Shown: piece after piece, positions 7,740 through 37,811 of the stretch
Numbering within the stretch: position 1 is the stretch's first letter
How the letters are laid out: each line of letters begins with the position of its first letter
Assembly (NCBI GenBank): GCA_002269645.1
Contig: NIVC01000824.1
Span: 1-39,896, forward strand
From: Macrostomum lignano
Taxonomy: Eukaryota
Reading direction: 5' to 3'
Length of the DNA stretch: 39,896 nt
Translations under genes and position numbers: made by a program
Notes under the pieces: model-generated
Databases searched by the model: none
The model's input: the letters and a program-made list of their open reading frames with translations, nothing else
Told to the model about the DNA's origin: nothing

Positions 7740-10700
7740 TCATCGGCGCCAGTAAAACACAGCCGCAGTCGTTGCTAAGGAAGCTGCCGAGAGCAACAGG
7801 CCGCCTATCGATTGCCGAGCCGCCTGATTTACTTCCTCCGCCAGTGGCCTATGGAAGGACGCCACATTGCCATTCGATTCGTCTATCGGCTGATCGCCGG
7901 ACCCGTCGTCCACCCAATCCTCGATCTTCTCGGCCGGCCCCGGCCTGTGCCGCCGCTTGCACTCGCCGGCCGTTGTCGGCACCATGTCGCTGTTGACGCA
8001 CTTCATTCCGGAGTACTGGGCAAAGTAGTTGGGCAGCATTACGCAGTGGCCCATGCGGCAGCGGCTGCCCGTGGGCCTGTCGCACGGCCAGTTGGATTGC
8101 ACCGAGACGTCTTGCGGGCAGATCGGCGATTTGCCATCGCAGAACTCAGGAAAGTTGCATCTTGAATTAAGGAAAGTGACTGCGGGATAAGATTCTACTC
8201 ATTCATGAATTTATTATCTCCCTGCAAGCTCCAATGCACAGCAATCAAGTATTATCTACAAATTTCATATGGGTTTGTAGTCTAATCAAATATTATCCAC
8301 GATCTGCAAGGACCCTATCCAGCAGGCTCAGACTATCAACGCAAACCTGGGATCTTCGGCCAGTCTGCACAGAGTGCCCGCGGCCAGCGGGCTGCACGAA
8401 GTCGTGTTGCAGCAGTCGCCAGTTGCGCACGCTGCGCCTTTGACCAGCTTGCAGACGTCGGCCTGGCAGCAGCGATCCTTTCTGCAGGCGAGCGGCCCGC
8501 CGCAGTCGCACTCTTCGCCAGGCTCGACAATCCCATTGCCGCAGGTCGGTCCCCAGTCCTTCGAGTACTCAACGGTGAAGATGTAGCCATCTGGAGGTCA
8601 TTGAGTTGGATCAAGTGGGACTAGCGAGGACTAAATATCGCCTCTGTACACTGACTCTCGCCCTACGACCCATCGTTGGATTCCCAGTGCGGCCACATTT
8701 CCCTCGTATTTCAGGACTTGTGTACACGAATTGGCCGGAAGTTTGTCACGCGATTCACAGCCATGAGGGCCAACCCTCAAGGCATAGCGAGTGTACATGT
8801 CTGACTATTAGAAAGTCACGTTCACTGTACACCCTGCGAGAATGTGTGTGTAAGTGCGTGCCTGCGTACAATATTGGCACGCTTGTACATGTATGTGCTC
8901 AGGAGTGTACAATATTGGCACGCTTGTACATGTATGTGCTTAGGAGTGTACAATATTGGCACGCTTGTACATGTATGTGCTCAGGAGTGTACAATATTGG
9001 CACGCTTGTACATGTATGTGCTCAGGAGTGTACAATATTGGCACGCTTGTACATGTATGTGCTCAGGAGTCAGCGGAATGAGTAGATTATCCTTGCATAA
9101 GCCGTTGGCATAAGTCACTCACTGGTGCTCGAGAAAGGCTCAGCTGTCGCAGACAAGCAGGCTGCGTCTAGTGCCAGGCTGTCCAGCGCGTCCGCGACTT
9201 TGTTGATGCCGCAGTTGGTCCAGCCAACGTACTTGCTGCCATCGTTGCTGCGTCCTACAGAGTCGTCCATCAGGCACTGGGAAAATTTGCACTGGCATTT
9301 ATCCACGGAGTCGTGATTCCCGCCCAACCTGTGAACCAGCTCGTGTGCCAGGGCGAAGCCCGACAATTTTATATAATTCGGCCGTTTCGTGTCCAGCTGC
9401 GGGGCAGCGATAATTGATTGAGAAGTTTCAATAGAAAAGTGACGTTCTGAGATTGCGAAACTTTCCAGAATAATGAATGTGAATTCATATTCAAATGTTA
9501 ATTAGTTGAAGGACTCCCTCAAAAAGGCCTAACTAAAAGCGCAAATATGACTTGAAATTTCCACCCGAAAATGTCGAATGATACTTTCGCAACAAGATGA
9601 GTCAACTACTTTAGGCTACTAATAGCTGGACACAGCAGCTCAGCTGGTAGCGCGTCCGACTCTCACGTCTCCAAGAGAGTTCGAAGTTCGAAAAAAAAGA
9701 CAAATGGAGGTCTCAGACAATAGACTGGCACTCATAGCATTCGCCACAGAGGCGAATAAAAGAGAAAAACCACAGGAGCCAGTAAATCAACTCGCAAAGG
9801 TGAGCTCCAGAGCAAATGGAATCTCGCCATCAGAAGCGACCGCCCAACACACTGGCAGAAGAGAGAAGAAAACAATGAGCAGCGCCCTGGACACTGGCGA
9901 AAGCCAACCAAGCGAGACGGCGCGGCTGACAGGCAAGACTGGAGGGCTTAGAGGGGGCGAGATGTGACAGAAAAATGGCGAGCTCTGGATGAGAAGAGAG
10001 CTGTCCCAACACAAGAACGGCAGCCTACGCCCGCAGGCTTGACGACCGACGGTTCGATGGACAATTTAAAGTGTACAAGAGACAGTGAGAGAGAGACAGA
10101 CGGAAATGCATTCAGCTTTAATAGATTCTTTACTCTCATCAAATGTATCCAGCTCAACCAATGCGATTGCGCACCTCACAAATTACTCTAGCCTCTGCGA
10201 CTTAGCAACATGATAATAAACAGACTCGCTGCACAAGTATAGGGCGCTCTGTCCCGATTAAGACGAGTTGCTCGCTTGGCAATACAGTAGATACAAATAG
10301 TAAACTGAGTACGTATCAATATTAAAGTTTCGACACGTTTCGCACTCCAAGGTGCATCTAGAGGTCAGGTTATTGACGAGAGAGCAGAAAAGATTTGTGT
10401 ACTGAATAGCACTACTAGTTGCGGCTTTTATTAGAAGCAGGGAGGCTGTATACACAGCGGCGCACTTCACCGACATTGTCACACGAGAGGCATTACTGCC
10501 CATTCCACCGACCCCCTGAGCAGGCACACACTCACAGGAGTGTACAGCGGCCCTGACTTTATTTATCGTTAGGCATGTACACTTCACTGCGCCTTGGATG
10601 TTGGCCCTCAAGGGCGTTAATTGCACGAGCAGACACACGTCGAGATTCCAATTCAGCCTCAAATTAATGTGACTGCATTTGGAATCGAGCTTGGGACGCT

Positions 10701-13700
10701 GGCACATCAGAACGCCGCGGCCCACTAAGTACTGCGGATTATAACGGAATTTAAATGGTTGAAGGTGGAAAAAGACTGATAAAAATTTGACTTGGGTTAC
10801 CAGAGGCTAATAAAGTGCAGTTTTAATACAATCTACGTGTCAATAGGGCACAAGAATGTGAAGTGAGGCTTCAATGATCTGAGTTTGAAATCAGATTGAC
10901 GTCTTGTCAATGATTGTCTGACACTCGTCGGATTTGACTTCAATTTCAATTTTCCATGGCTTAAAGCTTCTACATGTATTCCTTGCCGATGAAGATGCAC
11001 GTGAACAGACATCCCGACGGCGACAGCGGAGAAAAATTGTCAATGGTTTTACGAGAATCGGAACCTCGAGCCGGAACGGCATCTCTTTTCGGTGTGCTCA
11101 GGCTTTGCATTGTTTATAATAATTAATAATATTAATAATAATAATAATTGATCACACCTGCCCTAATAGACAGATGTGCAACCGACAGCTCAGCCGCAGC
11201 TATTGCGCGGCGCATCTGAAGGCTGCGTACGGCTGTTCAGTCCAAGGACTGGGGGGTCGCCACACACAGCCTTAATTACCCCAGCTAATGCTGGCACTCA
11301 TTTTACAGCTGAGTGAACTGAAGCAATGCAGAGTTAAGTGTCTTAAGTGTCAAGGATACAAATTGTTCCAGTGGAATCGGGAATCGAACCCCCGACCTTC
11401 AAGTCGTGAGTTCTACGCTCTGACCATTAGGCTACAACCGCACTGTCTATAGAGCTGATTAAATCTCTATGCTATACCAGCACTCATTTTTCTTCAAATA
11501 TTCAAGTGATAATAAGTTAACTGAATCGCTTAAGAACAAAGGCTCTTCTCACGGCAGGCTAGATCAGTGTTTAGAGAATCGAGAGAGTTGAAACACCGGT
11601 GCACAGGACATGTACATACTCGTATATTGCATGAGAAGCATCGCCAGCTACTGAGACATCACCTTACAGAAAGCGACAATCGGGTATTGGATGACAGGTG
11701 CCGGCATTTAAATGGCACAAGATAGCTAAGATGGTAGAAAACAGCCCCCTGGTAGCTACACTGTTTAACAGCCACACAGCTCACAGTGACGTATCCAAGA
11801 CAGGTCGGCCGACCGAGCTGATGCTTGCAGACGTTGCCTTCTGAATCTGAAGCCGTGGAGTTGTCGATACTTCGTGCGCTGCAATGCAAGGGATGTGATG
11901 ATGCGTTGCTGAGAGGCAGTTAGGAAAAACAGCTGATGCCGAAGCCTAAACAGCTGGTATTAAATAATGCTTACGTGAATACAAAGATGCAGTTAACGAT
12001 TTGCTCAACAATAACCCCATAGTTGTTGTACGTGTAAGTATCTCGAATGAACTTGAGCTCGTTCCGGCTAGGAATGTCATAATCTCTAGCCAATAGATTC
12101 CAAGGCAAGTGCAGACTGGTCACCATCAAGTAGGTATTTAGTGGTCTGAGAAGCTACAAAATTATTAATATTTGCTATAGTCATTCAAGGACAAGGCAAA
12201 CCTCGCAGAGCAGTGATCAAAGCTTACCGTGTTTGCGTAGTTGACCACTTGTTTAGCTATGTTGCTCATTTCAGCTTGGTTCCGATTCGTGCGTTTCTCC
12301 TGTTTGAGAATGTTTTCGGTGATGCGGCTGCTATGAGAAAAAGAGCTGCTACTGTAGAGTTTCATTCATTCATAAAACGCTACTGTAAGTAGAGTAACGC
12401 AAAAACGCGCAGAAAAACTTAAACTATGAATCACGTTACTATTTATGTTTCGCAAAATTTTCCTATAAATACAAGCCAAAATTAAAGCGGAAATCTCAGA
12501 CTCGGAACAGCCTCAGAAGAGACTCATCCAGAACAACCACTGGAAAGGGGCTACATCTCTGAGAGAAACGTATACCGATTGGCAAGACTTTGTTGAAGTC
12601 GTTATTTGATTATTGAGTGTTGAGTCATTTTCGGCCGTGACTGATCAGTTGATTTCTGTTGAGTTATTGAATTAAAGGCCTCCATATTCATATTCCTAAG
12701 GGATTGGATAGGATCCACTGGACCGATTCCGATACTCTTGACGATTATCGATTTTTATTGACTTTGGCACCCTGGAGTACCAGATCGAGGCACACGACTC
12801 CCATTCCGTTATTTCTAGAAGAAGACGCCCTTTCTGGAGGACCTCGCGCTATTATTAGGGCGCATCTCTGATTCTGATTACTGATCTCGAGGAATACATT
12901 CCAAGAAACTCCGGAGGAAGACTACATTGAGGAGACGAGCTCTGCCGACCTGCCCGACAAAGAGGAAGAGCCCGCGACAGTACTTGATCACTAAATTCTG
13001 TTCCCAGACTTGCGGTCTGAAAGTATAGGAGTTCTTGAGCGACTGATCACCACCCCTAAACTCTTCACTACGAGCGTAGGAAGCGAGAAACTTACAAACT
13101 CCCTGTCCAAGTAGAGATGCAGCTTGACAATGTAGGGCCCGAATTTGGTCAGGAATCTGAACTGCTGGCTGAGGCTGATGTTCGCCCGAGTGAACTGCAG
13201 CCGGCCAGCTTGGTTGATTTTTCTAGAGCGCGGCGTTGCGTATCTGCGAGTCCTGCTGAGCTGCTCCATCGGCGGCGCAGTGAGGATTGCAGTTCGTGAG
13301 TGGTTTTGTGTGAGGAAGCGCATGACTGAATTCGTGACTGGGTGAGACAGATGTGCAACCGATAGCTCAGCCGCAGCTATTGCGCGGCGCATCGGAAGGC
13401 TGCGTACGGCTGTTCAGTCCGAGGACTGACAGGGGGGGGTCGCCACACACACCCTTAACTACCCCAGCTAATGCTGGCACTCATTTTACAGCTGAGTGAA
13501 CTGAAGCAATGCAGAGTTAAGTGTCTTAAGTGTTAAGGATACAAATTGTTCCAGTGGAATCGGGAATCGAACCCCCGACCTTCAAGTCGTGAGTCCAACG
13601 CTCTGACCACTAGGCCACAACTCCTGCTCGAAAGCTCATGAAAGTGTTTTTTAATAAATTGAATAAATTCAGAATACACGAGTACTCAAGGACGACTCAA

Positions 13701-14317
13701 GTAGGAGGACGGGAAACCTCGTTTCTTTGAAAATTTTTGAAGGCAGGTTTTCCAAAAAATACACTACAGAGATAGGAAATTTTCATTTTTTCAGCACAAA
13801 AATTGTTATTGCTTTTGATAGGAGGCAGATCCAGTGTTATCTTTTGATATGCTGTGCCTTTCTTATTGCTTTATTGATATTCATAGAGCTTTTCGTTCAG
13901 AAAATTAGGATTCTATCTTAACTTTTTATTCTACGTACATTTGCACGTGTCTTCTGCCTAAAAACCATTAAAATGGCACGGCTCGGCTCTTTAGTTTTAT
14001 GAGTCTATTTTATCACCCTTAGCTGAATGTGTCACAAATATGTGTAACAACGATGATAATCGACGAAAAGCTTTCCCGTCCTCCTACTTGAGTTGTCCTT
14101 GCGAGTATTCTGAATGAGAGTTAGTGAGTAAGCTGTATTACTGTTACCAGGTACATTGTCTTACCTGTTCAGATGCGGATGCTGCCTCTGTACCAGCCGG
14201 GTCAGGACTTGCGTCATCATTGTGCTCGACAGACTCACCGAGGCAAACAGACGCCTCTGGAAGCAGCGCAGCGAAGATGCTCGCGCTGACAAGTAACCAA
14301 GTGGCTAGCAAGTGCAT
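7740..14317 (-). CDS. ADAM/reprolysin-type zinc metalloprotease-disintegrin, paralog 1 (516 aa); exons 14317-14239, 14187-14165, 13260-13096, 12299-12228, 12153-11975, 11878-11785, 9396-9123, 8590-8347, 8160-7740
   Basis: Signal [19 protein letters not shown], furin-like [16 protein letters not shown], Met-turn CLMD, disintegrin [15 protein letters not shown]...CNFPEFC. All GT-AG with matching phases; 1551 nt in frame. Confidence 0.9.
8615..9085 (+). mobile_element. SINE family B, diverged copy carrying an internal 41-bp tandem array
   Basis: Shares GAGGGCCAAC..CAAGGC..AGTGTACATG..AAAGTCA..CTGTACAC..GTGCCTGC..CTCAGG..GCGGAATG with the copies at 10426 and 19041. Confidence 0.7.
8867..9070. 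repeat. 41-bp tandem repeat, 5 copies (TACAATATTGGCACGCTTGTACATGTATGTGCTCAGGAGTG)
   Basis: Units start at 8867, 8908, 8949, 8990 and 9031. Confidence 0.97.
10426..10738 (-). mobile_element. tRNA-derived SINE family B
   Basis: Reverse complement closely matches 19041-19407: B-box GCTCGATTCC, central domain, A-rich CTAATAAAA tail. Confidence 0.85.
11171..11439 (-). mobile_element. tRNA-derived CORE-like SINE family A, copy 1
   Basis: Minus-strand head with A-box TAGCCTAATGG and B-box GGTTCGATTCC; CORE-like ACTTAAC..CTGTAAAATG; near-identical to three other copies. Confidence 0.9.
13348..13621 (-). mobile_element. SINE family A, copy 2
   Basis: Near-identical to copy 1, including a ~47-bp 3' extension and the diagnostic GTGTCTTAAGTGT variant. 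Confidence 0.9.
13687..14101. mobile_element. MITE with 30-bp TIRs and 8-bp TSD (P-element- or hAT-like non-autonomous element)
   Basis: TIR CAAGGACGACTCAAGTAGGAGGACGGGAAA at 13687-13716 versus its inverse at 14072-14101 (29/30). Flanks are CGAGTACT and CGAGTATT. Confidence 0.85.
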
Positions 14318-14943: not shown

Positions 14944-17900
14944 CTATAGTATGCATTCAGATTCGAATGAATATCGGAATTCCAACAGGTAAGGCAAGAT
15001 GCCCAGAGCAACGGAAGCCGCGACAACCAACGGGCCGCTCCGCAGATGCTGAGCAGCCTGGTCAGTTTCTTTAACTATCGGCTTTTGACTGGCTTTAGCG
15101 GCGCTATCCGATACAGTCTCGTTGAGACTGTCCGTCCATTCCTCGATCTGCTCAGCAGGGCCGGGGTTGTGCCTTTTCTTGCACCCGCCATCGCTGGCCG
15201 GCACCATCCAGCCGCCGTGGCACTTCGGCCCGCTGTACTTGGCGACCCGTCTCGGCGGCAGGCAGTAACCAAGTCTGCACAGGCCGCCCGTCGCCTTGTC
15301 GCACAGCCAGTCGGGCAGCACAGAGACATCCGGCGGACAAACTGACGATTTACCATCGCAGAACTCCGGGAAGTCGCATCTGGAAGGAGGTGACAAGTGA
15401 ATCTGGCTGACGAATTTCTCGCGAATTATTCACGTTTGACCCTCATAAGCTCGTTTTAACCGATTAAATCAAGTACATTTCCAACAGAGCGGACCAAATA
15501 ATATTAATATTACTATTACTATTATTATTATTACTAAGCAAACCTGGGATCTTCGGCCAGTCTGCACAGAGTGCCCGCGGCCAGCGGGCTGCACGAAGTC
15601 GTGTTGCAGCAGTCGCCAGTTGCGCACGCTGCGCCTTTGACCAGCTTGCAGGCGTCGGCCTGGCAGCAGCGATCCTTTCTGCAGGCGAGCGGCCCGCCGC
15701 AGTCGCACTCTTCGCCAGGCTCGACAATCCCGTTGCCGCAGGTCGGTCCCCAGTCCTTCGAGTACTCAACGGTGATGCTTTGTCCGTCTGGAGATCACAC
15801 AAAATTTGAATGGTTGCAGTTTCAATGTTCAGAAAGCCCATAATCAAAACTTGGGCCGACAAGCCACTTTCCAACTCAGCAATGTAAACAATCTAGGACT
15901 GGCGCGAGGCTTCCCAAGGTTTAACAACTTACAAAATGCAGTTGGATCCACAGTTGAACGTGGAAGAAACCCTCTGGCCAAGACTACCCAGCCGTCTGAT
16001 GCGAGCTAGTAAGCAAACACAGAGCATCTGAAGGCTGCTTACGGCTGTTCAGTCCAAGGACTGGGGGGTCATCACTCACCACACACCCCAATTGCCTCAG
16101 CTAATGCTGGCACCCATTTTACAGCTGGGTGAACTGAAGCAATGCAGAGTTAAGTGTCTTGCTTAAGGACATAAATTGTTCCAGTGGGATCGGGAATCGA
16201 ACCCCCGACCTTCAAGTCGTGAGTCCAACGCTCTGACCACTAGGCTACAACCCCTGCTATCAGATTAATGATGTTAAGTCCTCGCTTCTTTCCAATGCGA
16301 ACGCCCCAGCAAGCAAAGTTGGGGACATGAGGACCCAGCCTTCATATACAATGGAAGGGATTTTGCGATAAACCAGTATAAAACCTTGTACAAGTACAGC
16401 CCAAGAAAGAAAGTTCGCTTATCCTCCTCGCCTTAGTTTTCTGTCCCACCCTTGGCCTGCTACTCGAATCTCGACTTTGGAGACTGAGTATAACAGAGAC
16501 TAAGTTGAACGAAAACTTGACTTAAACAATAATCTGACCTTCAACTTGTGGCCTCCTTGGCCTGGCACTAACGCTTGAGCATTGAATCGTAGAACAAAAG
16601 CCACAAAGACTAGAGCAAACAAAGCGTACAGTATTGCACTCTGGCTCACCCTCGCGAGCTCCAGAGCTCCAGTTGGCGGACAGGCAGGCCTTCCCTAGCG
16701 CCAGAGCATCGAGAGACTCGGCCAACTTGTCGATGCTGCAAGTGGACCAGCCAATCGGACTTTTCTCATCGTCCATGCCTACGTATTGGTCCATCAGGCA
16801 GCGGGAGAACTCGCACCGGCACTTGTCGTCGGCGTTGTCGTGGCCGCAGCCAACTCGGTGGCTGATCTCGTGGGCCAGAGCGACTCCAGCTGTTACGATG
16901 TAGTTTGGCTTGTTCGTCTCCAGCTGTGAATTATGAGCAAGAGTTATCATTCAATGCGTAAAAACAGGCAGAGGGTCAAGCACCAGAACGGAGCCCAAAG
17001 TAAAGCTTTGGATCAAGCAAAACTACAATTTATCATTTGTGGGACAAGTTGATAAAAATGCCGCAAATAAAAACAATGGAATTGGATTTGCAAGTCAACT
17101 TAAGCCTCTTACATCATGGAGAGGCTATAGTTACGCCAAGTTTCAATTTTCATCATAAAAATGGTTCATTCAACCGTTCCCTCACCATGACGAAGCCTTT
17201 GCATTTCGGCTTGCCGTAGTCTTTCTTGCAAGGGTGACCGGATGAGTCCGAAATTGAGTAGTTCATATGGTCCCGGCCTCTGCAAAATTGAAAGAAAAAA
17301 TCTAATTGAAAGTGCTTCAGCTCAGAAACTGTAAACAAATTGACACGAATTCAGCAATATTTTTATTAACTCACAGGAAAATAAAAACGCAATTAATGAC
17401 CTCTTCAAACATGTAAGAGTAATACTGGTAGTTGTAATCGTTCAGAAAATATAATATGTCATTGCTTCGTGGTTCCAGACTTGACCCGACATGCTTCGAC
17501 GGAATGTGCGTGCTCGCCACCATGATGTAGAAGTTGAATGGCCTCAACAACTGCAATCACAAGCAAGGTGTTTGATGTGAGCAACTTTAACATAAATGAA
17601 AAATATTTGTTACAGGCTTCAGAGCGAGTCTAAGTCTCCGGAGGTTTCAACTTCCGTCAGAGTCACTGTGCAAGTGTCAGGGTCGGTTAGAGTAGCTTGT
17701 GGAGTCAGGGTCGATCAGTGCAGCTTGTGGAGTCAGGGTCGGTCAGAGTAGCTTGTGGAGTCAGGGTCGGTCAGAGTAGCTTGTGGAGTCAGGGTCGGTC
17801 AGAGCAGCTTGTGGAGTCAGGGTCGGTCAGAGTAGCTTGTGGAGTCAGGGTCGGTCAGAGTAGCTTGTGGAGTCAGGGTCGGTCAGAGCAGCTTGTGGAG

Positions 17901-22935: not shown

Positions 22936-23129
22936 CAAGTGTCAAAGTCGGTCACAGCTGCAGGAATTATAGAATGAGCTATGATAAAAAGTATATTTTT
23001 GGTTTGCAATGAAGAAATTCTTACAAGGGAGAGGTTAAAACCGCTAGAGCTCATTTACTCAGCTCTGCAATATGCCTGACTATGCAATATGCCTGCAATA
23101 TAGTGCAGGTGAAGCTACAAAATTCACTA

Positions 23130-26100: not shown

Positions 26101-29100
26101 ATAAAATGCAGGAGTGGCGACTCCTGCATCTCCAGCCAAAATAGGTTATATAGTATTAAACACAGATGCTAGAATATACTTGGGCCACTTAGCACATTTT
26201 CTTGTAATCTACTTTCAGTAGTAAGTTAAACGGAAGCATTTTAATGTATTTTAAAGCTTAGGCTCATTTATCGGCTCTTAAATAAAAAGCTTAGGCGACT
26301 CGCGCCTTTTCGCACTATAATACGTACCCCACCCGCGCCCAATTTTTATTGCCTTTCTCGGAATTCCAGCCTAAAGCTGCCATGTACATTTCAGTGGACT
26401 GGCTAATGTACATTATTGCTGAACCAATTAGCAAGCTGTTTACGCCTGCAAGCTTGGGCTTCTAAACTTATCAAATTCATTTCAGCTGCCTTTATTTTTA
26501 TAAAATAGCTTACGTATTCTTCATTGCTACTGAACTGAAAGTAGAAAGCTGTTTTACTAAGTATATATGCCTGAGTGGCCCATCTCGTAATTTTAGTATC
26601 TGATGTACTAAACGAATCCTATGGATTTTGAAAGACCGTTCTTCGATCCAGCAAAATAATTCCAAGAAACAACGACCGCGAAAACATCTAAATATACTAA
26701 ATCTCTAAGGTTTGTATGCTTGTCCATGTCCAATATACTAAAAATCAAAACTATGTACCTATAGGAACCTTCGCTTAACTTGACTCTACATGGTCGGAAT
26801 TTCGTGGGGTTTTCTGCATTCGATGCGTATTGATGGTGCGCAGGTACACAAAATTTTGCTAAGAAATTGCTTCATTATTTCGGGCTTAAATATTCGAAAA
26901 ACTCAATTTTCTCCCTGTTTTTTAAAGTTCAAACAGTTCTTTCCGATTGAGAAGCAGTCTGCCGGCCGATGGAATTGTATTGCATCATAACTCAGTGCCA
27001 ACTATAGCATTGGTTCTCCACACTCGCGTGGAGAGCTACAAGCGTTGAAAGGTTGCGCAACACATTTTAATTGAGGGGCGGGTGTCGCTATTCAATTATT
27101 CATGGGCTGGCTTCATGTGGCTTGGTTGTTAATTTCAATGCATCAACTTGCAGGCCTCTTACTGAGCTGGCGCTGAATGTACGCCTTATGAATTTGAATG
27201 CTTTAAAGCAGGAATGTTCAATCATTGTTTGTGCTTCGAGTTTTTTACTTTCAGAAGAGAGCCTTGTATTGCTAGAAAGAGCTTGAAACGCTGAGTTCGG
27301 GAATAATTTCTTTGCTTACTCGTAGATTCGAAAAATTAAAAGCACAGCATTAAAAAGAAGATTCCTTTGAATTTTACTTTATATACTCATTGTACGCTCT
27401 CCAATATCGCAAACCCCTACTTTATCGCAATTCCACAATTCAAGCCAGCGCCATTGAATTTAGATTTAGATTGCGTAACCATATTGGTGACTTTATTTGA
27501 AACTGATACAGACTGGCTGAGAAATTATGTCATAACTGCTTTGCGTGATTTACTCTGTGCGTGGAGTTTTGAAAGTGTTGAATTATGTAAGTGCTACAAT
27601 TTATGTTATCAAAGCATTGAGAGATAGCCTAGAGGTAAACAGACTGACCTGCTAATGCAGCGACGTGGGTTCGAATTTTTAAATTGTAGAAGTATTTTAT
27701 TAAAAAAAATTAATTTTAAACTTTTTAGCTAAAGAAAACTAAAAAAACGTCAGGTAAATCAGGTAGAAGAGAAGCTACGAGTATTATATTCAAAAAAAAT
27801 TATTAAACTGAGATGCCAAGGCTAAGAGGGAATTGCTGAGATATCAAGACGTGAGGGGAATTGCTGAGATGTCAAGACTTACTGGGGGAATTACTGAGAT
27901 ATAAGGGCTTACTGAGAGAATTACTGAGATGCCAAGGCTTAAGAGTGAATTGCTGAGATGTCAAGGCTTGGAGGGAATTTCTGAGGTGTCAGGGCTTGGT
28001 GGGAATTGCTGAGATGTTAAGTCTTGGGGAGGAATTCTATGGATCGGGGAATCTTTGAACGAGAGATGCTTCTAATGGATATCTCGAGGAGATGAGGGGA
28101 TTCTTTGGCCAAGAATTCTATTCATGGGCGGATTATTTGGATGGGAGTTTCTTTGGATTCCTTGAATGGGGGATTCTGTTGATGGGGATTATTTGGACGT
28201 AAAGTTTTTTGAACGGGTTTTTTTAGATGAGGGTATTATTTGGCCAATTATTCTTTTGATGGGAGAATCAATGGATAATGTGGATGGAGATTCTGTGGAT
28301 GGGGATTATTTGGACGTGGATTATTTGCATGGGGATTTTTTGGAGGGAGATTCTTTAGTTAGGAATGGATGGGGATGGATAGGAGGATTCTTTGGATAGG
28401 GATAAATAGGGGCATTTTTTCGATAGGGATGGATGGGGGATTCTTTGGATATGGATGGGTGGGGGGTTCTTTGGATATGGATGGGAGGGGGATTCTTTGG
28501 ATATAGATGGGTGGGGGGATTCTTTGGATATGGATGGGTGGGGGATTCTTTGGATATGGATGGGTGGGGGATTCTTTGGATTTGGATGGGTGGGGGATTC
28601 TTTGGATATGGATGGGTGGGGGATTCTTTGGATATGGATGGGTGGGAGATTCTTTGGATATGGATGGGTGGGGGATTCTTTGGATATGGATGGGTGGGGG
28701 ATTCTTTCGATGGGGACTCTGTGAATGAGGGACTCTTTTAATAGGGATTCTTTTGAAGGGGATTCTTTGCATGTGAGATGTTATGGATGGGCAATGCATT
28801 GGATGGGAAATTCTTCAAATAGGAGAATTCCTTGAATGGGGAATTCTTTGGATCCGGGATTCTATTGATAGGGGTTCTTTGGATGGGAGACTTTTTGATA
28901 TGGATGGAGGTCGAGGATTTTTTGGATAGGGATGGATAGGGGGATTCTTCGGATCGGGGATTCTATCGATGGGGTTCTTTGGATGGGGATTCTCTGCATG
29001 TAAGATTCTATGGATGGGCAATTCTTCAGATAGGAGAATTCCTTGAATGGGGAATTCTTCGGATCGGTGATTCTATCGATGGGAGGTTTTTTGGATGGCG

Positions 29101-32100
29101 GATTCTTTGCATGTGAGATTCTTTGCATCGTGGATTTTATGGGTGGTGTATTCTTTGGATGAGGGATTCTTTGTATGGGAGATTCAGTTGGGTGAAATTT
29201 TATTGCGTGGGAAAACTGTGGCTGGAGTTTGGACGGAAAGCCTCAACGGGAGTTGGAATTGGCTAGCTGAGGAAATTGCTTCATTAATCTTGCTGGGGGT
29301 ACTTTCTACAGGGGTTGCTTGCTATCGGAAGGACGCTTGCTCTTGGGGTATGCTTGCTCGGAAGAGAATTTTAAGATGTCAAGATTTACAAGGGGAATTA
29401 TTGAGATACATGTATAAAATCTTACCTTGGGGAATTAATGACATGTGAAGGCTTAAGTGGGACTTGCTGAGATGCCAAGGCTTGTGGGGGAATTGCTGAG
29501 GTGTGAAGGCTTAAAAAGAATTGCTGAGGTCTTAAGTCTCGGGAGGGGAATCGCTAAGATGTCAAGACTTACTAGAGGAATTACTGAGATATGAAGGCTT
29601 ACTGGGAGAATTACTGAGATATCAAGGCTTGGGGAGGGGAATTACTGAGATGTCAAGGCTTTGGACGGGGAGAAATTGGTAACATGTCAAGGCTTGCGCC
29701 GGAATTGCTTAGATGTCAATGCTTGGGGAAAATTTCTGAGGTGTCGAGGCTTGGGGAAATTGCTGAGATGTTAAGTCTTGGGGGAATTCTATGGATTGAT
29801 GATTCTTTGGATGAGGGATGCTTCTAATGGATAAATTTGAATAGGTGATTCATTGGGCAATTTCTTCGGTGGGGCATTGTTTCGATTGAGGGTTTTTTGA
29901 ATGGGGGATTCTTTAGATGAATGATTCTTTAGATGGGGGTTATTTGAACGGGGGTTCTTTAGATGAGGGGATTCTGGATTCTTTGGCCAATTATGCTTTT
30001 GATGGGGGATTATTTAAGGATGTGAATTATTTAGAGGGGGGATTTTTTGGAGAAGGAATTTTTTGGATATGGATGGTTAAGGTGATTATTTAGATAGGAA
30101 TGGATGGGGAAATTCTTTGGATAGGGATGAATAGGAGGATTCTTGGGATAGGGATGGATGGGGGATTGTTTAGATAGGGATGGATGGGCGATTCTTTGGA
30201 TAGGGATGGGTGGGGGGATTCTTTGGATAGAGGGTTTCTGTGGATGAGGGATTTCTTGAATAATGGATTTATTGGACGGGGAATTCTTCAGATGGGAGGA
30301 TTCCTTGAATGGGGAATTCTTCGGATCGGGGATTCTATCAATGGGATGGGATGGGGATGGGACGGGAAGGATTGGTATTCTTTGCATGTGAGATTCTATG
30401 GATGGGCGATTCATTAAATAGGGAATTCTACAGATAGAGGATTCCTTGAATGGGGAATTCTTCGGATCGGGGATTCTGTCGATGGGAGGTTCTTTGTATG
30501 GGATTCTTTGGATGAGGGTTTTTTGCACGTGAGATTATTTGCATCAGGGACTTTATGGATTAGAGATTCTTTGGATGGGGGGGGGGTTCAGTTGGGTGAA
30601 TTTCTTTTGCGTGGGAAAACTTTGGTAGGAGTTCTGACGGAAAGCCCCAACGGGGGTTGGAATTGGCTAGTCCTATATACTAAAAATGAAAATCTTGCTT
30701 GTTTGTACGCAATCGATTAGAGAAAAAATGGCTTAACCGATTTTCATGAGACTTGCACTGTTCGATCAGAAATTTTCCCGTGACGGTACATGCATCTTGG
30801 CTAAGAAATTGCTCCATGTTAAAGCGATTAAATATTCGAAAAACATGCTTTTTTGCAAAGGTCAAGCAAACTTTTCGACTTGAAATGCATTGTAAGAATG
30901 CTAGAGAAAAAACTGACTGGTTGAATTCTGATTCTGAAATAAATTGCATCATAAATGAATTGTAACTCCGACTTGAATTGCGTCACAGTATTGAAAATGC
31001 AGTGTGGAAGCGTAGCACCAGACGTGATTTAGATTGCGTAACCATATTGTTATCTGATACTGACTGACTGAGAAACTGATTATGTCATAACTGCTTCGTG
31101 TGATTTACTCTATGCTTGGATTTTAAACTGTTGAATTATATATATATAAGGGCAAAATTTGATGTTATCAAAACGATGAGAGCTAGCCTAGAGGTTAGCA
31201 AACTGAACTGCTAAATGCAGCGACGATGGTTCGAATTTTCATAGAGTATAATTTTTTTAATTAAAGCTTTTCAATGTCAGGAAAACTAAAAGACTTTTTA
31301 AAAAGAAGCGTCATGTAAAAATCATAGAAGCGTCATGTAAAAATCGTGGAAGCGTCATTTAAAAAATCATAGAAGCGTCATTTAAAAAATCATGGAAGCG
31401 TCATATAAAAATCATAGATGCGTCATTTAAAAAATCATAGATGCGTCATTTAAAAAATCATAGAAGCGTCATGTAAACAATCATAGAAGCGTCATGTAAA
31501 CAATCATAGAAGCGTCATGTAAACAATCATAGAAGCGTCATGTAAAAAATCGTAGAAGCGTCATGTAAACAATCATAGAAGCGTCATGTAAAAAATCATA
31601 GAAGCGTCATGTAAAAAATTATAGAAGCGTCATGTAAAAAATCATAGAAGCGTCATGTAAACAATCATAGAAGCGTCATGTAAAAAATCATAGAAGCGTC
31701 ATGTAAACAATCATAGAAGCGTCATGTAAAAAATCATAGAAGCGTCATGTAAAAAATTATAGAAGCGTCATGTAAAAAATTATAGAAGCGTCATGTAAAC
31801 AATCATAGAAGCGTCATGTAAAAAATCATAGAAGCGTCATGTAAACAATCATAGAAGCGTCATGTAAAAAATCATAGAAGCGTCATATAAAAATCATAGA
31901 AGCGTCATTTAAAAATCATAGAAGCGTCATGTAAAAAGCATAGAAGCGTCATGTAAACAATCATAGAAGCGTCATGTAAACAATCATAGAAGCGTCATGT
32001 AACAATCATAGAAGCGTCATGTAAACAATCATAAAAGCGTCATTTAAAAAATCATAGAAGCGTCATATAAAAATCATAGATGCGTCATTTCAACAATCAT

Positions 32101-35100
32101 AGAAGCGTCATATAAAAATCACAGAAGCGTCAAGTAAAAAATCATAGAAGCGACGGGAAGCGTCATATAAAAATCGTAGAAGCGTCATATAAAAACCATA
32201 GAAGCGTCATGTAAAAATCGTAGAAGCGTCATGTAAAAAATCATAGAAGCGTCATGCAAAAAATTATAGAAGCGTCATGTAAACAATCATAGAAGCGTCA
32301 TATAAAAATCATAGAAGCGTCATTTAAAAATCATAGAAGCGTCATGTAAAAAATCATAGAAGCGTCATGTAAACAATCATAGAAGCGTCATTTAAAAATC
32401 ATAGAAGCGTCATGTAAAAAATCGTAGAAGCGTCATGTAAACAATCATAGAAGCGTCATGTAAAAAAAATCATAGAAGCGTCATGTAAAAAATTATAGAA
32501 GCGTCATGTAAAAAATCATAGAAGCGACGGGAAGCGTCATATAAAAATCGTAGAAGCGTCATATAAAAACCATAGAAGCGTCATGTAAAAAATCATAGAA
32601 GCGTCATGTAAAAAATCATAGAAGCGTCATGTAAAAACTCAGGGAAGCGTCATGTAAAAAATCATAGAAGCGTCATGTAAAAAATCATAGAAGCCTCATG
32701 TAAAAAATCGTAGAAGCGTCATGTAAAATATCATAGAAGCGTCATGTAAACAATCATAGAAGCGTCATGTAAAAAATAATGGAAGCGTCATGTAAAAAAT
32801 CGTAGAAGCGTCATGTAAACAATCATAGAAGCGTCATGTGAAAAAAATCATAGAAGCGTCATGTAAAAAATTATAGAAGCGTCATGTAAAAAAATCATAG
32901 AAGCGTCATGTAAACAATCATAGAAGCGTCATGTAAACAATCATAGAAGCGTCATTTAAAAATCATAGAAGCGTCATGTAAAAAATTATAGAAGCGTCAT
33001 GTAAAAAATCATAGAAGCGTCATGTAAACAATCATAGAAGCGTCATGTAAAAAATCATAGAAGCGTTATGTAAACAATCATAGAAGCGTCATGTAAAAAA
33101 TCAGAGAAGCGTCATGTAAACAATCATAGAAGCGTCATGTAACAATCATAAAAGCGTCATGTAAACAATCATAGAAGCGTCATGTAAAAAATCATAGAAG
33201 CGTCATGTAAACAATCGTAGAAGCGTCATGTAAACAATCATAGAAGCGTCATGTAAAAAATCGTAGAAGCGTCATGTAAAATATCATAGAAGCGTCATGT
33301 AAACAATCATAGAAGCGTCATATAAAAAAATCATAGAAGCGTCATGTAAACAATCATAGAAGCGTCATGTAAACAATCATAGAAGCGTCATGTAAACAAT
33401 CATCGAAGCGTCATGAAATAATCATAGAAGCGTCATGTAAAAAGCATAGAAGCGTCATGTAAAAAGCATAGAAGCGTCATGTAAACAATCATAGAAGCGT
33501 CATGAAAAAATCATAGAAGCCTCATTTAAAAACTAATGAAAGCATCATTTAAAAAATTAAGAAGCATCATGGAAGAATAAAAGAAGTGTAATGTAAAAAT
33601 CAAAAGAAGCGTCATGTCAGACATGAAGGATGTCATGTAAAAATGAAATGCAGCTATAATGCTGTGCTGGAAGAAAAACTGAGACGTAAAGGCTCTCAGA
33701 GAATAACTGAGATTACGAAGGGGGGGGTTGTTTCTGGGATCTCAAAGCAAAAGTCAGAAGCTACTTCAAAGTTCATGTACTTTACTCAATTTTTTATTGC
33801 ATTCTTTGTTGGCTCGCCATGGGGGGTGCTGATAGAAGAAGAGTCATGTAAAAAATAAAAGTAGCACTATGTATACATAAAAGACAAGTCATGTCGAAGT
33901 TAAAAGATTCATTTGGGAATTGCTACGATGTCAAAGCTTGGTGGAAATCGTTATAGTGCTGTGATTCTTAAAGAAGGAATCACTAAAATGTCAAGGCTTA
34001 GGGGAGAAGAATTGCTGAGATTTCAAGGCTTTAGGTTGGGTTAAAGTTAGGTTTAGGTCAGGTGTGGGTTGAGGGTTATATTTTATCGGGTTTCAAGGTT
34101 AACAGTGGATTTTTTAGATTTCAAGGTTTATGGGGGCCATCGCTGACATGTCAAAGCTTACGGACGGGGGGGGGAATAGCTGAGATGTCAAGGCTCACGG
34201 GGGTATAAATGAGATTTCAAGGCTAAAGTCAGAAGCTACATGTAGTTTATTGAAAACTTTTTATTACATTATTTGATGCCTCCTCAGGCGAGGGATCGCT
34301 GATAAAAAAAGCGTTATGTAAAAAATAAAAGAAGCTTATCGCTATAATGCTGTAGTAGTGCTATAATGACTCTTAGAGAGAATTACTGAAATTTCAATGA
34401 TTTAGGGTTAGGTTAGGGTTAGGGTTAGGGTTAGGGTTAGGGTTAGAAGGTTGACAGATATTTTTAGATTTCCAAGGCTTATTGGGGCATTGCTGAGATG
34501 TCAAGGGGGGAAGTTGATATGTTAAAGCTGGGGGGGGGGGGAATTACTGACATGTCAAGGCTTACAAGGTTTGACAGGAGATTTTTTAAGATTTCAAGGA
34601 TACATGTAGCTTATTAAAAAAACGTGTATAGCATTTCTTTGGCTCCCCAACGGGGGCGTAGATTGCTAGTAAAAACTAAAAATTAGTTAAAGCCAGACAT
34701 TCTTCAAATTAAAATTTCTTCCCTCAAAGCCAGTTGCATAGAACTCAGGCCTGAATAAACTCAAACAACAGACTCACCGTGTTAGCAAAGTTGACAACTT
34801 CTTTCGCTACTTTTATGGCGCCGTCTGAATTTCTAGAAAAGTGGCCATCCTACAGTGCATGGTTTGTGAGTCAGTTTGCAGTCGGACTTGAGAGCTGCCA
34901 ACCAAAGAGTCTAGAAGTCATGCCAAGTCAGCTGGCCCCTGAGCACGCACTCAAAACGGGTGTGTACAGCGGCCCCTGACTTCTCATCGCGTCAGGCATA
35001 CACACACTCCTCGCCCTTGTGAGTTGGACCTTGCGGAATCGAACCAAGGACCAAGGTCCAAGTAGAAGGACGGGAAACTAGGTAACTTTGAATTTTTTAG

Positions 35101-36250
35101 GAGGCAGTCTTTAAGAAATACATGACGGAGAATGAAGGTTTCATTTTTCAGCAAAAAAATTGTTATTGCTTTTCGCATAGGAGAGACCCAAAGTTCATCT
35201 TTTGATATGTCCTACCTTTCTGATAGTTCTGTTGATATTCACAGAGCATTTCGTTTAGAAAATTTGGCTTTTATGTCTTACAGATATTTTACAGATGGCA
35301 CAACTCGACTCATTGGTATTATGAATCTTTTTTATCATTCTGTTACACATCTTGTTACACAGTCACAAGGCAAGACAGAATATGTGGGTATCTTACCAAT
35401 CCTTTGTCCAAGTAGAGATGCAGCTGAATAATGTAGGGACCATTTTTTGTCAGGAATCTGAACTGCTGGCTGAGGCCAACGCTAACGTGAAGTAGTTGAA
35501 ACCTGTCCTTTAAAGGCTTTTTAAATTCGCGCATAGTTGCTCTGCGGACACGTCTGAGCGGCTGAAACTGAAATGCCGTGTTGCGTCACTGAGCATGCGA
35601 GGTTATGAGCGAGTTCACGAGTGACATATGATCAAAGCAAGGACGGGAAATCTCGTCTATTAGAAAACATTTGGGGGGCTGCTCTGCGCCAAAAATATAC
35701 TTTGTACACTACGGAGATAGCACATAAAAGCGATTAATTTTTTCATTGGTTTTTCATTGGTTTCTTCTGTAAAAACGTTCTTATGAAGGTGTATTTAAAA
35801 TTGTACATGCCTTCTTCTATTTAAAGTAAAAATTCATAAAAAATATGACTGGGAAGCTTTTTTTAACAAATAAAAGACTTGATTTGAATCCCGTCTCTCT
35901 CCTTTAATCGTCTTTGGATCAATGTTCTCTATGTTGAAGATCTACATTTATGCATCAAAATGCAGGTGCATAGATGCTAGTTAAATAGTCACACCTAATA
36001 AATTTTGCACTCACCATTTCTGACGATTTCAAAGGCTCTGGTAAATAGGTGTCTTCTAAAGAGTGAAAAAATTAGTGTTTAGATTGGTTTATATCAAAAC
36101 GTTTGACGTACGATATGTTGTGCCATAAAATCGAAATTACTAAATTATAATCGGCAAAAGTATACTGTCACCTTCTTGGCCTGATGCGATGGTAAGCAGA
36201 GTAATCAACGTTACGACTGAAGCGCAATAGAAGGCAAGCGTCCAACGCAT
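23130..36250 (-). CDS. ADAM/reprolysin-disintegrin paralog 3 (529 aa); exons 36250-36172, 36037-36015, 35561-35397, 34849-34778, 26020-25842, 25430-25337, 24815-24548, 24212-23969, 23595-23130
   Basis: Signal MRWTLAFYCASVVTLITLLTIASG, RVRR, AKEVVNFANT|LLKPFN, HELSHRIGASHD, CLMN, disintegrin domain. 1590 nt in frame. The exon 8 donor gtccgt is weak but gives the same 244-nt length as in the other paralogs. Confidence 0.85.
24330..24530 (-). mobile_element. SINE-like fragment sharing the family B central domain
   Basis: Minus strand: AAAGTCAGAGCCGCTGTACACCCTGTGTGCCTGCTCAGGTGTCAGTGGAATG. Its 3' part resembles 37590-37745. Confidence 0.6.
24935..25255. repeat. 21-bp minisatellite (GGTCGCTAAGGAATCCTCTAG and variants)
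   Basis: Tandem units in paralog 3 intron 24816-25336. Confidence 0.92.
25485..25745. repeat. 12-bp array (CATGAACTCACT-like), inverse orientation of the 19408 array
   Basis: Tandem units in paralog 3 intron 25431-25841. Confidence 0.92.
26163..26602. mobile_element. MITE family 2, copy 2
   Basis: Colinear with 19900-20344 along its whole length. Confidence 0.85.
26687..30670 (+). mobile_element. Non-autonomous Helitron-like element, unit 1
   Basis: 5' A|TCTAAATATACTAAA (a second TCCAATATACTAAAAATCAAAA at 26729). 3' hairpin AGCCCCAACGGGGGTT then CTAG at 30667-30670. Internal duplicated 3' end with CTAG at 29263-29266. Confidence 0.7.
28425..28710. repeat. 26-bp G-rich minisatellite (TGGATATGGATGGGTGGGGGATTCTT), about 11 copies, within a wider degenerate G-rich field (28030-30580)
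   Basis: Direct tandem units. Confidence 0.9.
31304..33640. repeat. ~23-bp AT-rich satellite (AGAAGCGTCATGTAAAAAATCAT), roughly 95-100 copies
   Basis: Tandem units with a variable A-run; degenerates after ~33520. Confidence 0.98.
34402..34446 (+). repeat. Interstitial telomeric repeat, (TTAGGG) about 7 units
   Basis: TTAGGG TTAGG (TTAGGG)5 TTAG; a degenerate copy lies at ~34031-34078. Confidence 0.9.
34930..35045 (-). mobile_element. SINE fragment with B-box and family B central domain
   Basis: Minus strand: GGTTCGATTCC..AAGTCAGGGGCCGCTGTACAC..GTGCTCAGGGG. Confidence 0.6.
35050..35340. mobile_element. Diverged copy of the 13687 MITE family
   Basis: CAAGTAGAAGGACGGGAAA left end; internal TTTTCAGCA..AAAATTGTTATTGCTTTT..ATCTTTTGATATG matches 13790-13850. 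Another partial copy lies at ~35636-35915. Confidence 0.65.
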
Positions 36251-37745: not shown

Positions 37746-37811
37746 GAGAGAATCGCATAACAATGTGTGAGGTTGCCTGCCAGATGGAGTCACCAACAGT
37801 CTCTCTCCGCG

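What the first reader, a model, noticed from the sequence alone, without database searches (positions are those of the whole stretch)
7740..36250. Three tandem prodomain-less, probably GPI-anchored ADAM-like proteases
Seen: all three 9-exon genes are in frame with intact HExxHxxGxxHD and Met-turn. Only ~10-17 residues separate the signal peptide from an RxRR site, so there is no room for the usual ~170-200 aa ADAM prodomain or cysteine switch. After the disintegrin come only a short Cys-rich piece and a linker. The chains end in a hydrophobic stretch with no or a very short tail (..AAVFYWRR*, ..ALFAVLLPS*). Known: ADAMs normally have a prodomain, EGF, TM and cytoplasmic tail; snake-venom P-III enzymes are secreted and have a prodomain. 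Inference: a lineage-specific compact surface protease family that may lack prodomain latency.
Basis: partly seen in the sequence, partly recalled or inferred. Interest (0 to 1): 0.75.

Follow-up and report, generated by a model that had tools for sequence, protein, structure and literature searches.

The report
Three compact flatworm ADAM-like protease genes
The flatworm Macrostomum lignano carries three neighbouring, transcript-supported genes for stripped-down ADAM-type zinc proteases that lack the usual long prodomain and end in a bare hydrophobic membrane-anchor signal; this is an unusual but not unprecedented variant of a well-known protease family.

Summary
The window is a complete 39,896-bp contig of the Macrostomum lignano genome. 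On the minus strand lie three tandem 9-exon genes, here called A, B and C (516, 522 and 537 aa). All introns are GT-AG and the intron phases are identical. My models of B and C are letter-for-letter the RNA-seq-derived GenBank proteins PAA76425.1 and PAA76426.1. Each protein has a signal peptide, 5-22 residues, a conserved RxRR site, a conserved ~35-residue segment, a Reprolysin catalytic domain with intact HExxHxxGxxHD and CLM Met-turn, a full disintegrin domain, a six-Cys remnant of the Cys-rich domain, a Cys-free stalk and one C-terminal hydrophobic stretch. Pfam finds no prodomain, ADAM_CR or EGF domain, and the window hides no cryptic prodomain exons. Catalytic-domain dN/dS is about 0.2. 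The nearest relative is a canonical 1031-aa M. lignano ADAM at 31-32% identity, and no orthologue was found elsewhere. "Prodomain-less" is therefore supported, although a mini-propeptide with a furin-type site remains. The GPI anchor is plausible for A and C but untested. B has 12 polar residues after its hydrophobic stretch and looks more like a transmembrane protein. Precedents exist: S. pombe Mde10, ADAMTS13 and predicted invertebrate proteins. I rate it a new variant of a known kind, of moderate interest.

The parts
7740..14317 (-). Gene A (516 aa), 9 exons; only its 3' part is annotated in GenBank (BOX15_Mlig013992, partial)
   Evidence: Model built. The C-terminal 310 aa match P0001. All 9 exons are intact in a second genomic copy, L001.
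14239..14317 (-). A exon 1: start codon and signal peptide ([26 protein letters not shown])
   Evidence: An in-frame stop lies 7 codons upstream.
14165..14187 (-). A exon 2: 23-nt micro-exon (EAASASEQ). The preceding 51-nt intron is in frame and free of stops.
13096..13260 (-). A exon 3: RTRR site (13254-13243), conserved post-site segment and first catalytic strand ([12 protein letters not shown])
12228..12299 (-). A exon 4: catalytic domain, first helix
11975..12153 (-). A exon 5: catalytic domain
11785..11878 (-). A exon 6: catalytic domain, loop with an extra Cys pair
9123..9396 (-). A exon 7: zinc site [12 protein letters not shown] (9345-9310) and Met-turn CLM (9276-9268)
8347..8590 (-). 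A exon 8: disintegrin domain
   Evidence: Near-identical to B exon 8, dS 0.15.
7740..8160 (-). A exon 9: end of disintegrin domain, 6-Cys remnant of the Cys-rich domain, stalk, hydrophobic C-terminus (7811-7749), RR, stop
14944..20511 (-). Gene B (522 aa), 9 exons; equals GenBank PAA76425.1 (BOX15_Mlig026616g3)
   Evidence: The annotation derives from RNA-seq assemblies.
20436..20511 (-). B exon 1: start codon and signal peptide ([25 protein letters not shown])
19690..19718 (-). B exon 2: 29-nt micro-exon ([10 protein letters not shown])
   Evidence: The same junction is used in UniProt model P0005.
18781..18951 (-). B exon 3: RVRR site (18942-18931), conserved segment and first catalytic strand
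18623..18691 (-). B exon 4: catalytic domain
17375..17550 (-). B exon 5: catalytic domain
17186..17279 (-). B exon 6: catalytic domain
16650..16923 (-). B exon 7: zinc site [12 protein letters not shown] (16872-16837) and Met-turn (16800-16792)
15544..15787 (-). B exon 8: disintegrin domain
14944..15379 (-). B exon 9: Cys-rich remnant, stalk, hydrophobic stretch (15039-14983), then the 12-residue tail [12 protein letters not shown] and stop
23130..36250 (-). Gene C (537 aa), 9 exons; equals GenBank PAA76426.1 (BOX15_Mlig019806g3). Intron 4 is 8.8 kb and full of minisatellites.
36172..36250 (-). C exon 1: start codon and signal peptide (MRWTLAFYCASVVTLITLLTIASG)
36015..36055 (-). C exon 2: 41-nt micro-exon (EDTYLPEPLKSSEM)
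35397..35567 (-). C exon 3: RVRR site (35552-35541), conserved segment and first catalytic strand
34778..34849 (-). C exon 4: catalytic domain
25842..26020 (-). C exon 5: catalytic domain
25337..25430 (-). C exon 6: catalytic domain
24548..24815 (-). C exon 7: zinc site HELSHRIGASHD (24764-24729) and Met-turn (24698-24690)
23969..24212 (-). C exon 8: disintegrin domain
23130..23595 (-). C exon 9: Cys-rich remnant, N-glycan-rich stalk, and a hydrophobic C-terminus LWLAVASSVALFAVLLPS that runs to the stop (23186-23130)

Best explanation
These are three old tandem duplicates of a Macrostomum-specific offshoot of the ADAM (M12B adamalysin) family. They probably derive from a canonical meltrin-type ADAM by loss of the ~200-aa prodomain at the 5' end. 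At the 3' end they have lost most of the Cys-rich domain, the EGF-like domain and the cytoplasmic tail, and a terminal hydrophobic stretch stands where the transmembrane segment would be. Shown: gene structure; RNA-based coding sequences for B and C; domain content; intact zinc site and Met-turn; an adamalysin-like predicted fold; purifying selection; absence of prodomain sequence. Inferred: the signal peptide takes the protein into the ER. A furin-type convertase cuts after the conserved RxRR and removes a 5-22-residue mini-propeptide. The single C-terminal hydrophobic stretch tethers the enzyme to the outer face of the membrane. In C, and perhaps A, this would be through exchange for a GPI anchor (candidate attachment residues A N488 and C D510). 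In B it would more likely be a tail-poor transmembrane helix. The mature product would be a short-stalked, surface-tethered zinc endopeptidase with a disintegrin module. It has no cysteine-switch latency, so control must come from expression, compartment or external inhibitors. Substrates are unknown.
For: Exon chains have conserved phases and GT-AG introns. B and C are identical to the GenBank proteins, whose annotation comes only from RNA-seq transcript assemblies and TransDecoder ORFs (PMC5730564). An in-frame stop lies 7-11 codons upstream of each ATG. Pfam finds Reprolysin plus Disintegrin only. tblastn with the prodomain and C-terminal half of the nearest canonical ADAM finds nothing in the window. 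Only about 630 bp separate the B stop from the A start. The zinc motif, Met-turn and RxRR are invariant in the three paralogues. dS is saturated, with dN/dS about 0.2 in the catalytic domain. A and B are intact in a second genomic copy, and B and C are intact in two further annotated copies. In the AF2 model the catalytic and disintegrin parts reach pLDDT 70-89. Foldseek matches P-III venom metalloproteinases and ADAM22 at E about 1e-20, and single catalytic domains at TM about 0.78. There are exactly two hydrophobic segments per protein, one N-terminal and one C-terminal. The best non-self hit is a 1031-aa M. lignano ADAM whose N-terminal extension precedes the aligned region.
Against: No transcript covers the 5' exons of gene A. 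It is annotated only from exon 7 onwards, so its start rests on homology and conservation. No dedicated signal-peptide or GPI predictor and no experiment was available. A ends in RR and B in 12 polar residues, which is atypical for GPI signals. ADAM prodomains are generally regarded as folding aids (my own knowledge of the family), so an ADAM without one might misfold or need another chaperone. The N-terminal 22-74 residues are modelled with low confidence. B has an odd number of ectodomain cysteines, with one inside the zinc motif. No expression pattern or phenotype was found.
Confidence: 0.62

Rival explanations
1. The proteins are the same, but they are anchored as ordinary type-I membrane proteins with minimal or no cytoplasmic tails, not by GPI.
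For: The hydrophobic stretches are 18-21 residues with a Kyte-Doolittle 19-residue mean of 1.6-1.85, long enough to span a membrane. A ends in the stop-transfer-like WRR, and B has a 12-residue polar tail. The ancestor-like M. lignano ADAM has a true transmembrane segment.
Against: C has no residue at all after the hydrophobic stretch. All three have a small residue pair (N-Q-A, D-Q-A, D-R-G) about 10 residues upstream of the hydrophobic stretch, separated by a 7-residue polar spacer. This is the classical GPI-signal geometry. Hydrophobicity is only marginal for a membrane span.
Confidence: 0.35
2. The ~50 residues between the signal peptide and the catalytic domain form a miniature prodomain that still gives latency or folding help, so the enzymes are zymogens after all.
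For: The segment after RxRR (consensus ..[24 protein letters not shown]) is among the best conserved parts of the protein. A furin-type site has been kept in all three despite saturated synonymous divergence. Short propeptides exist in the wider M12B family, for example ADAMTS13 (PMC8275829).
Against: The conserved segment lies after the RxRR site, not before it, so it would stay on the mature enzyme. The part before the site is short, poorly conserved, and has no conserved cysteine. The ADAMTS13 short propeptide reportedly neither chaperones nor modulates activity (PMC8275829). The AF2 model gives no confident contact with the active site.
Confidence: 0.25
3. The genes mainly serve adhesion or ligand functions through the disintegrin module, and the protease domain is not used as an enzyme.
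For: The disintegrin exon is the most conserved part and is homogenised between A and B. Many vertebrate ADAMs are non-catalytic (my own knowledge of the family). The Reprolysin scores are modest at 43-58 bits.
Against: All zinc ligands, the catalytic Glu, the Asp after the third His and the Met-turn are invariant in three paralogues with saturated dS, and catalytic-domain dN/dS is about 0.2. Non-catalytic ADAMs typically lose these residues; one example seen here is P0158.
Confidence: 0.1
4. The missing prodomain is an artefact: exons lie outside the contig or were missed, or the loci are decaying duplicates.
For: The assembly is fragmented and redundant. Gene A lacks 5' transcript support. 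Other annotations of the same locus are clearly wrong fusions.
Against: The RNA-based ORFs for B and C start at the same ATGs. Upstream in-frame stops are close. A lies 630 bp downstream of B, and B lies 2.6 kb downstream of C with a minisatellite between them. All three share the same 5' exon plan. No frame disruptions occur in any of three genomic copies.
Confidence: 0.05

Closest known systems
Canonical meltrin-type ADAMs (ADAM9/12/19/33/8-like); nearest sequence is M. lignano BOX15_Mlig005741 (PAA73542.1, 1031 aa)
   Same: They share the M12B catalytic domain with HExxHxxGxxHD and Met-turn, the cysteine pattern, a full disintegrin domain with ECDCG, and the first cysteines of the Cys-rich domain. 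A furin-type basic site sits upstream of the catalytic domain. Identity to Mlig005741 is 31-32% over about 350-415 residues.
   Different: There is no ~200-aa prodomain or cysteine switch. There is no hand part of the Cys-rich domain and no EGF-like domain. The cytoplasmic tail is absent or only 2-12 residues long, and total length is about half.
Schizosaccharomyces pombe Mde10 (ADAM-family spore-envelope protein, 512 aa)
   Same: It has almost the same compact layout and size: signal peptide, about 50 residues, catalytic domain, disintegrin domain, then a hydrophobic C-terminus with no tail. No Pep_M12B_propep hit is found. It is a characterised ADAM-family protein (PMC13489470, citing Nakamura et al. 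2004).
   Different: It is only distantly related (E about 1e-7, fungal ADM clade) and keeps a longer Cys-rich region. I see no RxRR site before its catalytic domain. The similarity in layout is probably convergent.
ADAMTS13
   Same: [quoted passage not shown] That it ends in a furin-type site is from my own knowledge.
   Different: It is a secreted ADAMTS with thrombospondin repeats, a disintegrin-like rather than a true disintegrin domain, and no membrane anchor. No TSP1 repeat is found here.
P-III snake-venom metalloproteinases (for example VAP1, catrocollastatin/VAP2, bothropasin)
   Same: They are the best structural and sequence matches among solved structures for the catalytic-disintegrin-start-of-Cys-rich unit.
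   Different: They are secreted, made with a full prodomain, and carry a complete Cys-rich domain. Identity is 23-26%. The flatworm proteins are membrane-tethered by prediction, and nothing suggests they are toxins.
GPI-anchored metzincins: MT4-MMP/MMP17, MT6-MMP/MMP25 (own knowledge, not tested here)
   Same: They illustrate the idea of a zinc endopeptidase held on the cell surface by a GPI anchor and activated by a furin-type cut.
   Different: They belong to a different family (M10 matrixins) and have a full prodomain with a cysteine switch.

Membership tests
ADAM / adamalysin (MEROPS M12B) | Reprolysin-type catalytic domain with HExxHxxGxxHD and a Met-turn | tested here: met
   Pfam PF01421 scores above its cut-off in all three. 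The motifs are invariant. Fold matches to ADAM and venom catalytic domains reach TM about 0.78.
ADAM / adamalysin (MEROPS M12B) | Disintegrin domain following the catalytic domain | tested here: met
   PF00200 matches full length (1-75 of 75) at E about 1e-18.
ADAM / adamalysin (MEROPS M12B) | N-terminal prodomain (Pep_M12B_propep) with a cysteine switch | tested here: not met
   No PF01562 hit at E<=1. Only about 50 residues lie between the signal peptide and the catalytic domain, with no conserved Cys. No cryptic exons are found.
ADAM / adamalysin (MEROPS M12B) | Complete Cys-rich domain (ADAM_CR) | tested here: not met
   No PF08516 hit. Alignments to ADAMs and P-III enzymes stop about 30 residues into the Cys-rich domain. 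Six Cys remain after the disintegrin domain.
ADAM / adamalysin (MEROPS M12B) | EGF-like domain, transmembrane helix and cytoplasmic tail | tested here: not met
   No EGF hit. There is one C-terminal hydrophobic stretch, followed by 2 (A), 12 (B) or 0 (C) residues. Whether it spans the membrane is undecided.
ADAMTS | Thrombospondin type-1 repeats after a disintegrin-like domain | tested here: not met
   No TSP1 hit; the disintegrin domain is a true one.
GPI-anchored surface proteins | N-terminal signal peptide, plus a C-terminal signal made of small attachment residues, a ~7-10-residue polar spacer and a terminal hydrophobic stretch with no tail | tested here: inconclusive
   Hand-applied rules only. 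The geometry fits in all three (A N488, B D484, C D510). The terminal stretch reaches the C-terminus only in C. A adds RR and B adds 12 residues.
GPI-anchored surface proteins | Release by PI-PLC, or a lipid anchor shown chemically | not testable with these tools
   This needs an experiment.
Furin-type proprotein-convertase substrates | R-x-[K/R]-R motif in an exposed position of a secretory protein | tested here: met
   RTRR, RVRR and RVRR are conserved in the three paralogues and lie in a low-confidence, probably flexible region of the model. Cleavage itself was not tested.

The most novel reading that the evidence does not exclude
A natural lineage of ADAM proteases folds and works with no prodomain at all. 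In this reading the conserved ~35-residue segment retained after the furin-type cut has taken over the folding-helper role, and the enzymes sit on the cell surface as constitutively active, GPI-anchored sheddases. That would make them a ready-made test case for what ADAM prodomains are really needed for.
Probability: 0.2. Interest if true: 0.6.

Novelty: new variant of a known kind. Interest (0 to 1): 0.4.

Why it matters
ADAM prodomains are held to be needed both to keep the enzyme silent and to help it fold. A family kept under selection in three old paralogues with only a 5-22-residue leader before a furin-type site challenges how general that rule is. It also sits in an animal where transgenesis is available, so the question could be tested directly. 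The family shows how a multi-domain surface protease can be pared down to catalytic domain, disintegrin domain and anchor. The practical weight is modest. Substrates, tissue and function are unknown, similar layouts exist in fission yeast and in predicted invertebrate proteins, and the proteins are already in public databases as uncharacterised entries.

Tried and rejected
1. The first structure prediction, with a 3-sequence alignment, was unusable (mean pLDDT 32). It was repeated with 21 sequences.
It was rerun with B, C and the partial A.
3. I looked for published expression or function of Mlig019806, Mlig026616 and Mlig013992. There were no hits in full texts or in the held supplements of five M. 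lignano papers.
4. Literature searches for GPI-anchored or prodomain-less ADAMs gave nothing specific.
5. The original Mde10 paper is not held.
6. tblastn with the prodomain (residues 1-225) and the post-disintegrin part (601-870) of the nearest canonical ADAM found no credible hit in the window. The best was E 0.02, on the plus strand (the genes are on the minus strand) at 9306-9410. Hidden exons were therefore rejected.
7. The pseudogene idea was rejected because of intact frames in all copies and dN/dS of about 0.2.
8. An upstream extension of the ORFs was rejected because of close in-frame stops.
9. Alternative 3' exons are unlikely, since no GT[AG]AG donor occurs in the last 60 nt of any coding sequence.
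10. The tRNA-like repeats in the introns are not called as tRNAs.
11. The long ORFs through minisatellites listed are artefacts of tandem repeats.

Full report
WHAT THE WINDOW IS. A protein search with the 3' exons of the first gene returned a 97-100% match to 'hypothetical protein BOX15_Mlig013992g2, partial [Macrostomum lignano]'. An exact-sequence look-up then showed that two of my gene models are GenBank proteins located on a contig of exactly 39,896 bp. The window is therefore a whole contig of the Mlig_3_7 assembly of this free-living flatworm. The same locus exists on two more contigs (copies g1 and g2). This fits the known redundancy of that assembly (PMC5730564). One of these copies, fetched as L001, is 95-99% identical to the window.

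CHECK OF THE OBSERVATION. Stop-to-stop frames on the minus strand showed three sets of metalloprotease, disintegrin and terminal exons. Translated comparisons of the three regions with each other revealed the smaller exons. Reading the DNA at each boundary gave three models of nine exons each. Every intron is GT...AG, and the phase of every exon is the same in the three genes. The coordinates are in the parts list.

Models B and C are identical, residue for residue, to PAA76425.1 and PAA76426.1. That GenBank annotation was built only from RNA-seq transcript assemblies with TransDecoder ORFs. The exon chains of B and C, including the 5' exons, therefore have independent transcript support. Gene A is annotated only from exon 7 onwards. 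Its 5' exons rest on homology, on conserved phases, and on being intact in the second genomic copy.

The zinc motif HExxHxxGxxHD, the Met-turn CLM and an RxRR site are present in all three.

ANATOMY OF THE PROTEINS. Pfam finds a Reprolysin domain (about residues 79-280) and a full-length Disintegrin domain (about 318-395). It finds no Pep_M12B_propep, no ADAM_CR, no EGF and no TSP1, even at E<=1. Each protein has just two hydrophobic segments, one at each end.

The N-terminal end:
- It has the shape of a signal peptide, with likely cleavage around residues 22-32.
- RxRR follows 5-22 residues later. This leader is poorly conserved and has no conserved cysteine.
- After RxRR come about 35 residues that are strongly conserved (..QQxRFLTKxGPYI..) and run into the first catalytic strand.

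After the disintegrin domain:
- Six cysteines remain. Alignments to ADAMs and to solved P-III enzymes end about 30 residues into the Cys-rich domain.
- The rest is a Cys-free stalk, partly acidic and carrying glycosylation sequons, followed by the hydrophobic end.

The ectodomain of A and of C has 28 cysteines. B has 29, the extra one lying inside the zinc motif.

With a 21-sequence alignment, AlphaFold2 gave a model with pLDDT 70-89 for the catalytic domain and most of the disintegrin domain. Confidence was low for residues 22-74 and for the stalk, and the model shows a terminal helix. Foldseek matched this model to P-III venom metalloproteinases and ADAM22 (E about 1e-20). It also matched isolated catalytic domains of ADAM8, ADAM33 and P-I enzymes at TM about 0.78.

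IS A PRODOMAIN HIDDEN SOMEWHERE? Four checks argue against it.
- Each ATG has an in-frame stop 7-11 codons upstream.
- About 630 bp separate the stop of B from the start of A. About 2.6 kb, mostly a 29-nt minisatellite, separate C from B.
- tblastn with the prodomain and with the post-disintegrin half of the nearest canonical ADAM found nothing credible in the window.
- The transcript-based ORFs start at the same ATGs.

The three paralogues share this 5' plan although their synonymous sites are saturated (dS above 1). The short N-terminus is therefore old and maintained. No donor-like site lies in the last 60 nt of any coding sequence.

ARE THE GENES FUNCTIONAL? dN/dS is about 0.2 in the catalytic domain and 0.3-0.4 overall. 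All copies in the assembly keep open frames. Between the window and L001, A differs at 1 of 1551 coding bases and B at 6 of 1569. Over the long aligned blocks that hold these genes and their introns and flanks, the two copies are about 95-99% identical.

RELATIVES. An exhaustive profile search of 1.84 billion representative proteins found only the M. lignano proteins themselves. Next came one hit at E 7e-51, and everything else was at E 1e-31 or worse. The 7e-51 hit is M. lignano BOX15_Mlig005741, a 1031-aa ADAM. It has a ~235-residue N-terminal extension ending in RKKR, an ADAM_CR domain, a transmembrane segment and a long tail. Identity to it is 31-32%. Named hits further down are ADAM9-, 12-, 33-, 8- and 19-like proteins and fungal ADM-B/Mde10. 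So the family looks like a Macrostomum-restricted offshoot of a meltrin-type ADAM. This holds only for what the databases contain. Other macrostomid genomes may be missing.

THE ANCHOR. No GPI predictor was available, so I applied the textbook rules by hand. All three proteins have a small residue pair (A N488-Q-A, B D484-Q-A, C D510-R-G). A 7-residue polar spacer follows, then a 17-18-residue hydrophobic stretch of only marginal hydrophobicity. That is the geometry of a GPI signal.

Only in C does the stretch reach the C-terminus. A adds RR and B adds [12 protein letters not shown]. From general knowledge of GPI signals, a polar extension after the hydrophobic stretch disfavours GPI attachment, so B is more likely a tail-poor transmembrane protein. 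I put GPI at roughly 0.6 for C, 0.4 for A and 0.2 for B. Membrane tethering by the C-terminus of some kind is about 0.75.

MECHANISM. The proposed steps are all inferred from motifs:
1. Entry into the ER.
2. Removal of the signal peptide.
3. A convertase cut after RxRR.
4. Anchoring by the C-terminus.
5. Zinc-dependent proteolysis at the cell surface, without cysteine-switch latency.

What is shown is the architecture, the intact catalytic machinery, the selection and the transcripts.

HOW UNUSUAL IS IT?
- The fission-yeast ADAM-family protein Mde10 (512 aa) has a signal peptide, about 50 residues, a catalytic domain starting near residue 69, a disintegrin domain, and a hydrophobic C-terminus with no tail. 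It has no Pep_M12B_propep hit. It is a characterised protein needed for normal spore surfaces (PMC13489470).
- ADAMTS13 has a very short propeptide that does not seem to act as a chaperone or to modulate activity (PMC8275829).
- The exhaustive search also returned predicted ADAM-like proteins in which a signal peptide is followed almost directly by the catalytic domain. Examples are Anthonomus grandis XP_050303471.1 and two unnamed ENA proteins. These are unverified gene models.

What is new here is the combination in an animal: loss of the prodomain with a furin-type site retained, a conserved post-site segment, truncation of the Cys-rich domain, a bare hydrophobic end, and maintenance of that plan in three old paralogues. 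The proteins are already deposited as 'hypothetical' or 'Disintegrin domain-containing' entries. I found no paper that mentions them.

VERDICT. I rate it a new variant of a known kind, with interest 0.4.

Noticed in passing
window 4909-6639 (+): An intronless 576-aa alkaline phosphatase gene (Pfam E 2e-122) lies tail-to-tail with gene A. It has a signal peptide and a GPI-signal-like hydrophobic C-terminus. The same gene sits next to A in the second genomic copy (L001).
   Followed up: partly
window ~1-2150 (-): Gln-rich ORFs here belong to a CRTC/TORC-like gene. The matching gene in L001 carries a weak TORC_N hit and runs off the locus.
   Followed up: no
window 38970-39843 (-): An alpha-tubulin-like sequence (Tubulin and Tubulin_C hits) is split over at least two reading frames and runs towards the contig end. 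It is either a pseudogene or the result of assembly indels.
   Followed up: partly
window 385-1032, 8866-9070, 17676-18614, 21678-22944, 31304-33617, 37797-38448 and others: Many long minisatellites (periods 16-41 nt, up to about 100 copies, some 99% identical) fill the introns and the B-C spacer. The 400-aa 'ORFs' through them are artefacts. They account for the size difference between the genomic copies.
   Followed up: partly
window 13640-13390, 11471-11209, 16272-16021, 21451-21200 (-): A ~250-bp repeat with a tRNA-like B-box (GGTTCGATTCC) occurs in introns of A and B and upstream of B. It looks like a tRNA-derived SINE, but ARAGORN calls none of the copies a tRNA.
   Followed up: partly
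window 8347-8590 versus 15544-15787 (-): Exon 8 (disintegrin domain) of A and B has dS 0.15, whereas the catalytic-domain exons of the same pair have dS above 2. This points to recent gene conversion between the neighbours, limited to that exon.
   Followed up: partly
window 16872-16837 (-), gene B: B has a cysteine inside the zinc-binding consensus ([12 protein letters not shown]). It is conserved in all three genomic copies and gives an odd number of ectodomain cysteines.
   Followed up: no
window 14188-14238 (-), gene A intron 1: This 51-nt intron is in frame and free of stops, so retaining it would simply add 17 residues to the leader before RTRR. Without transcripts for the 5' end of A, either form is possible.
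   Followed up: no
window 14944-36250; UniProt A0A1I8FIT5, A0A1I8H487, A0A1I8H800: Older UniProt/WormBase-type models fuse the tandem genes into 727-, 1475- and 1462-aa proteins, for example the last exon of C spliced to exon 2 of B. These are probably prediction artefacts, although read-through precursor transcripts are common in this species.
   Followed up: partly
window 20070-20345 versus 26328-26603 (-): A ~280-bp element 86-91% identical at the translated level lies in intron 1 of B and intron 4 of C. It is another dispersed repeat of unknown type.
   Followed up: no
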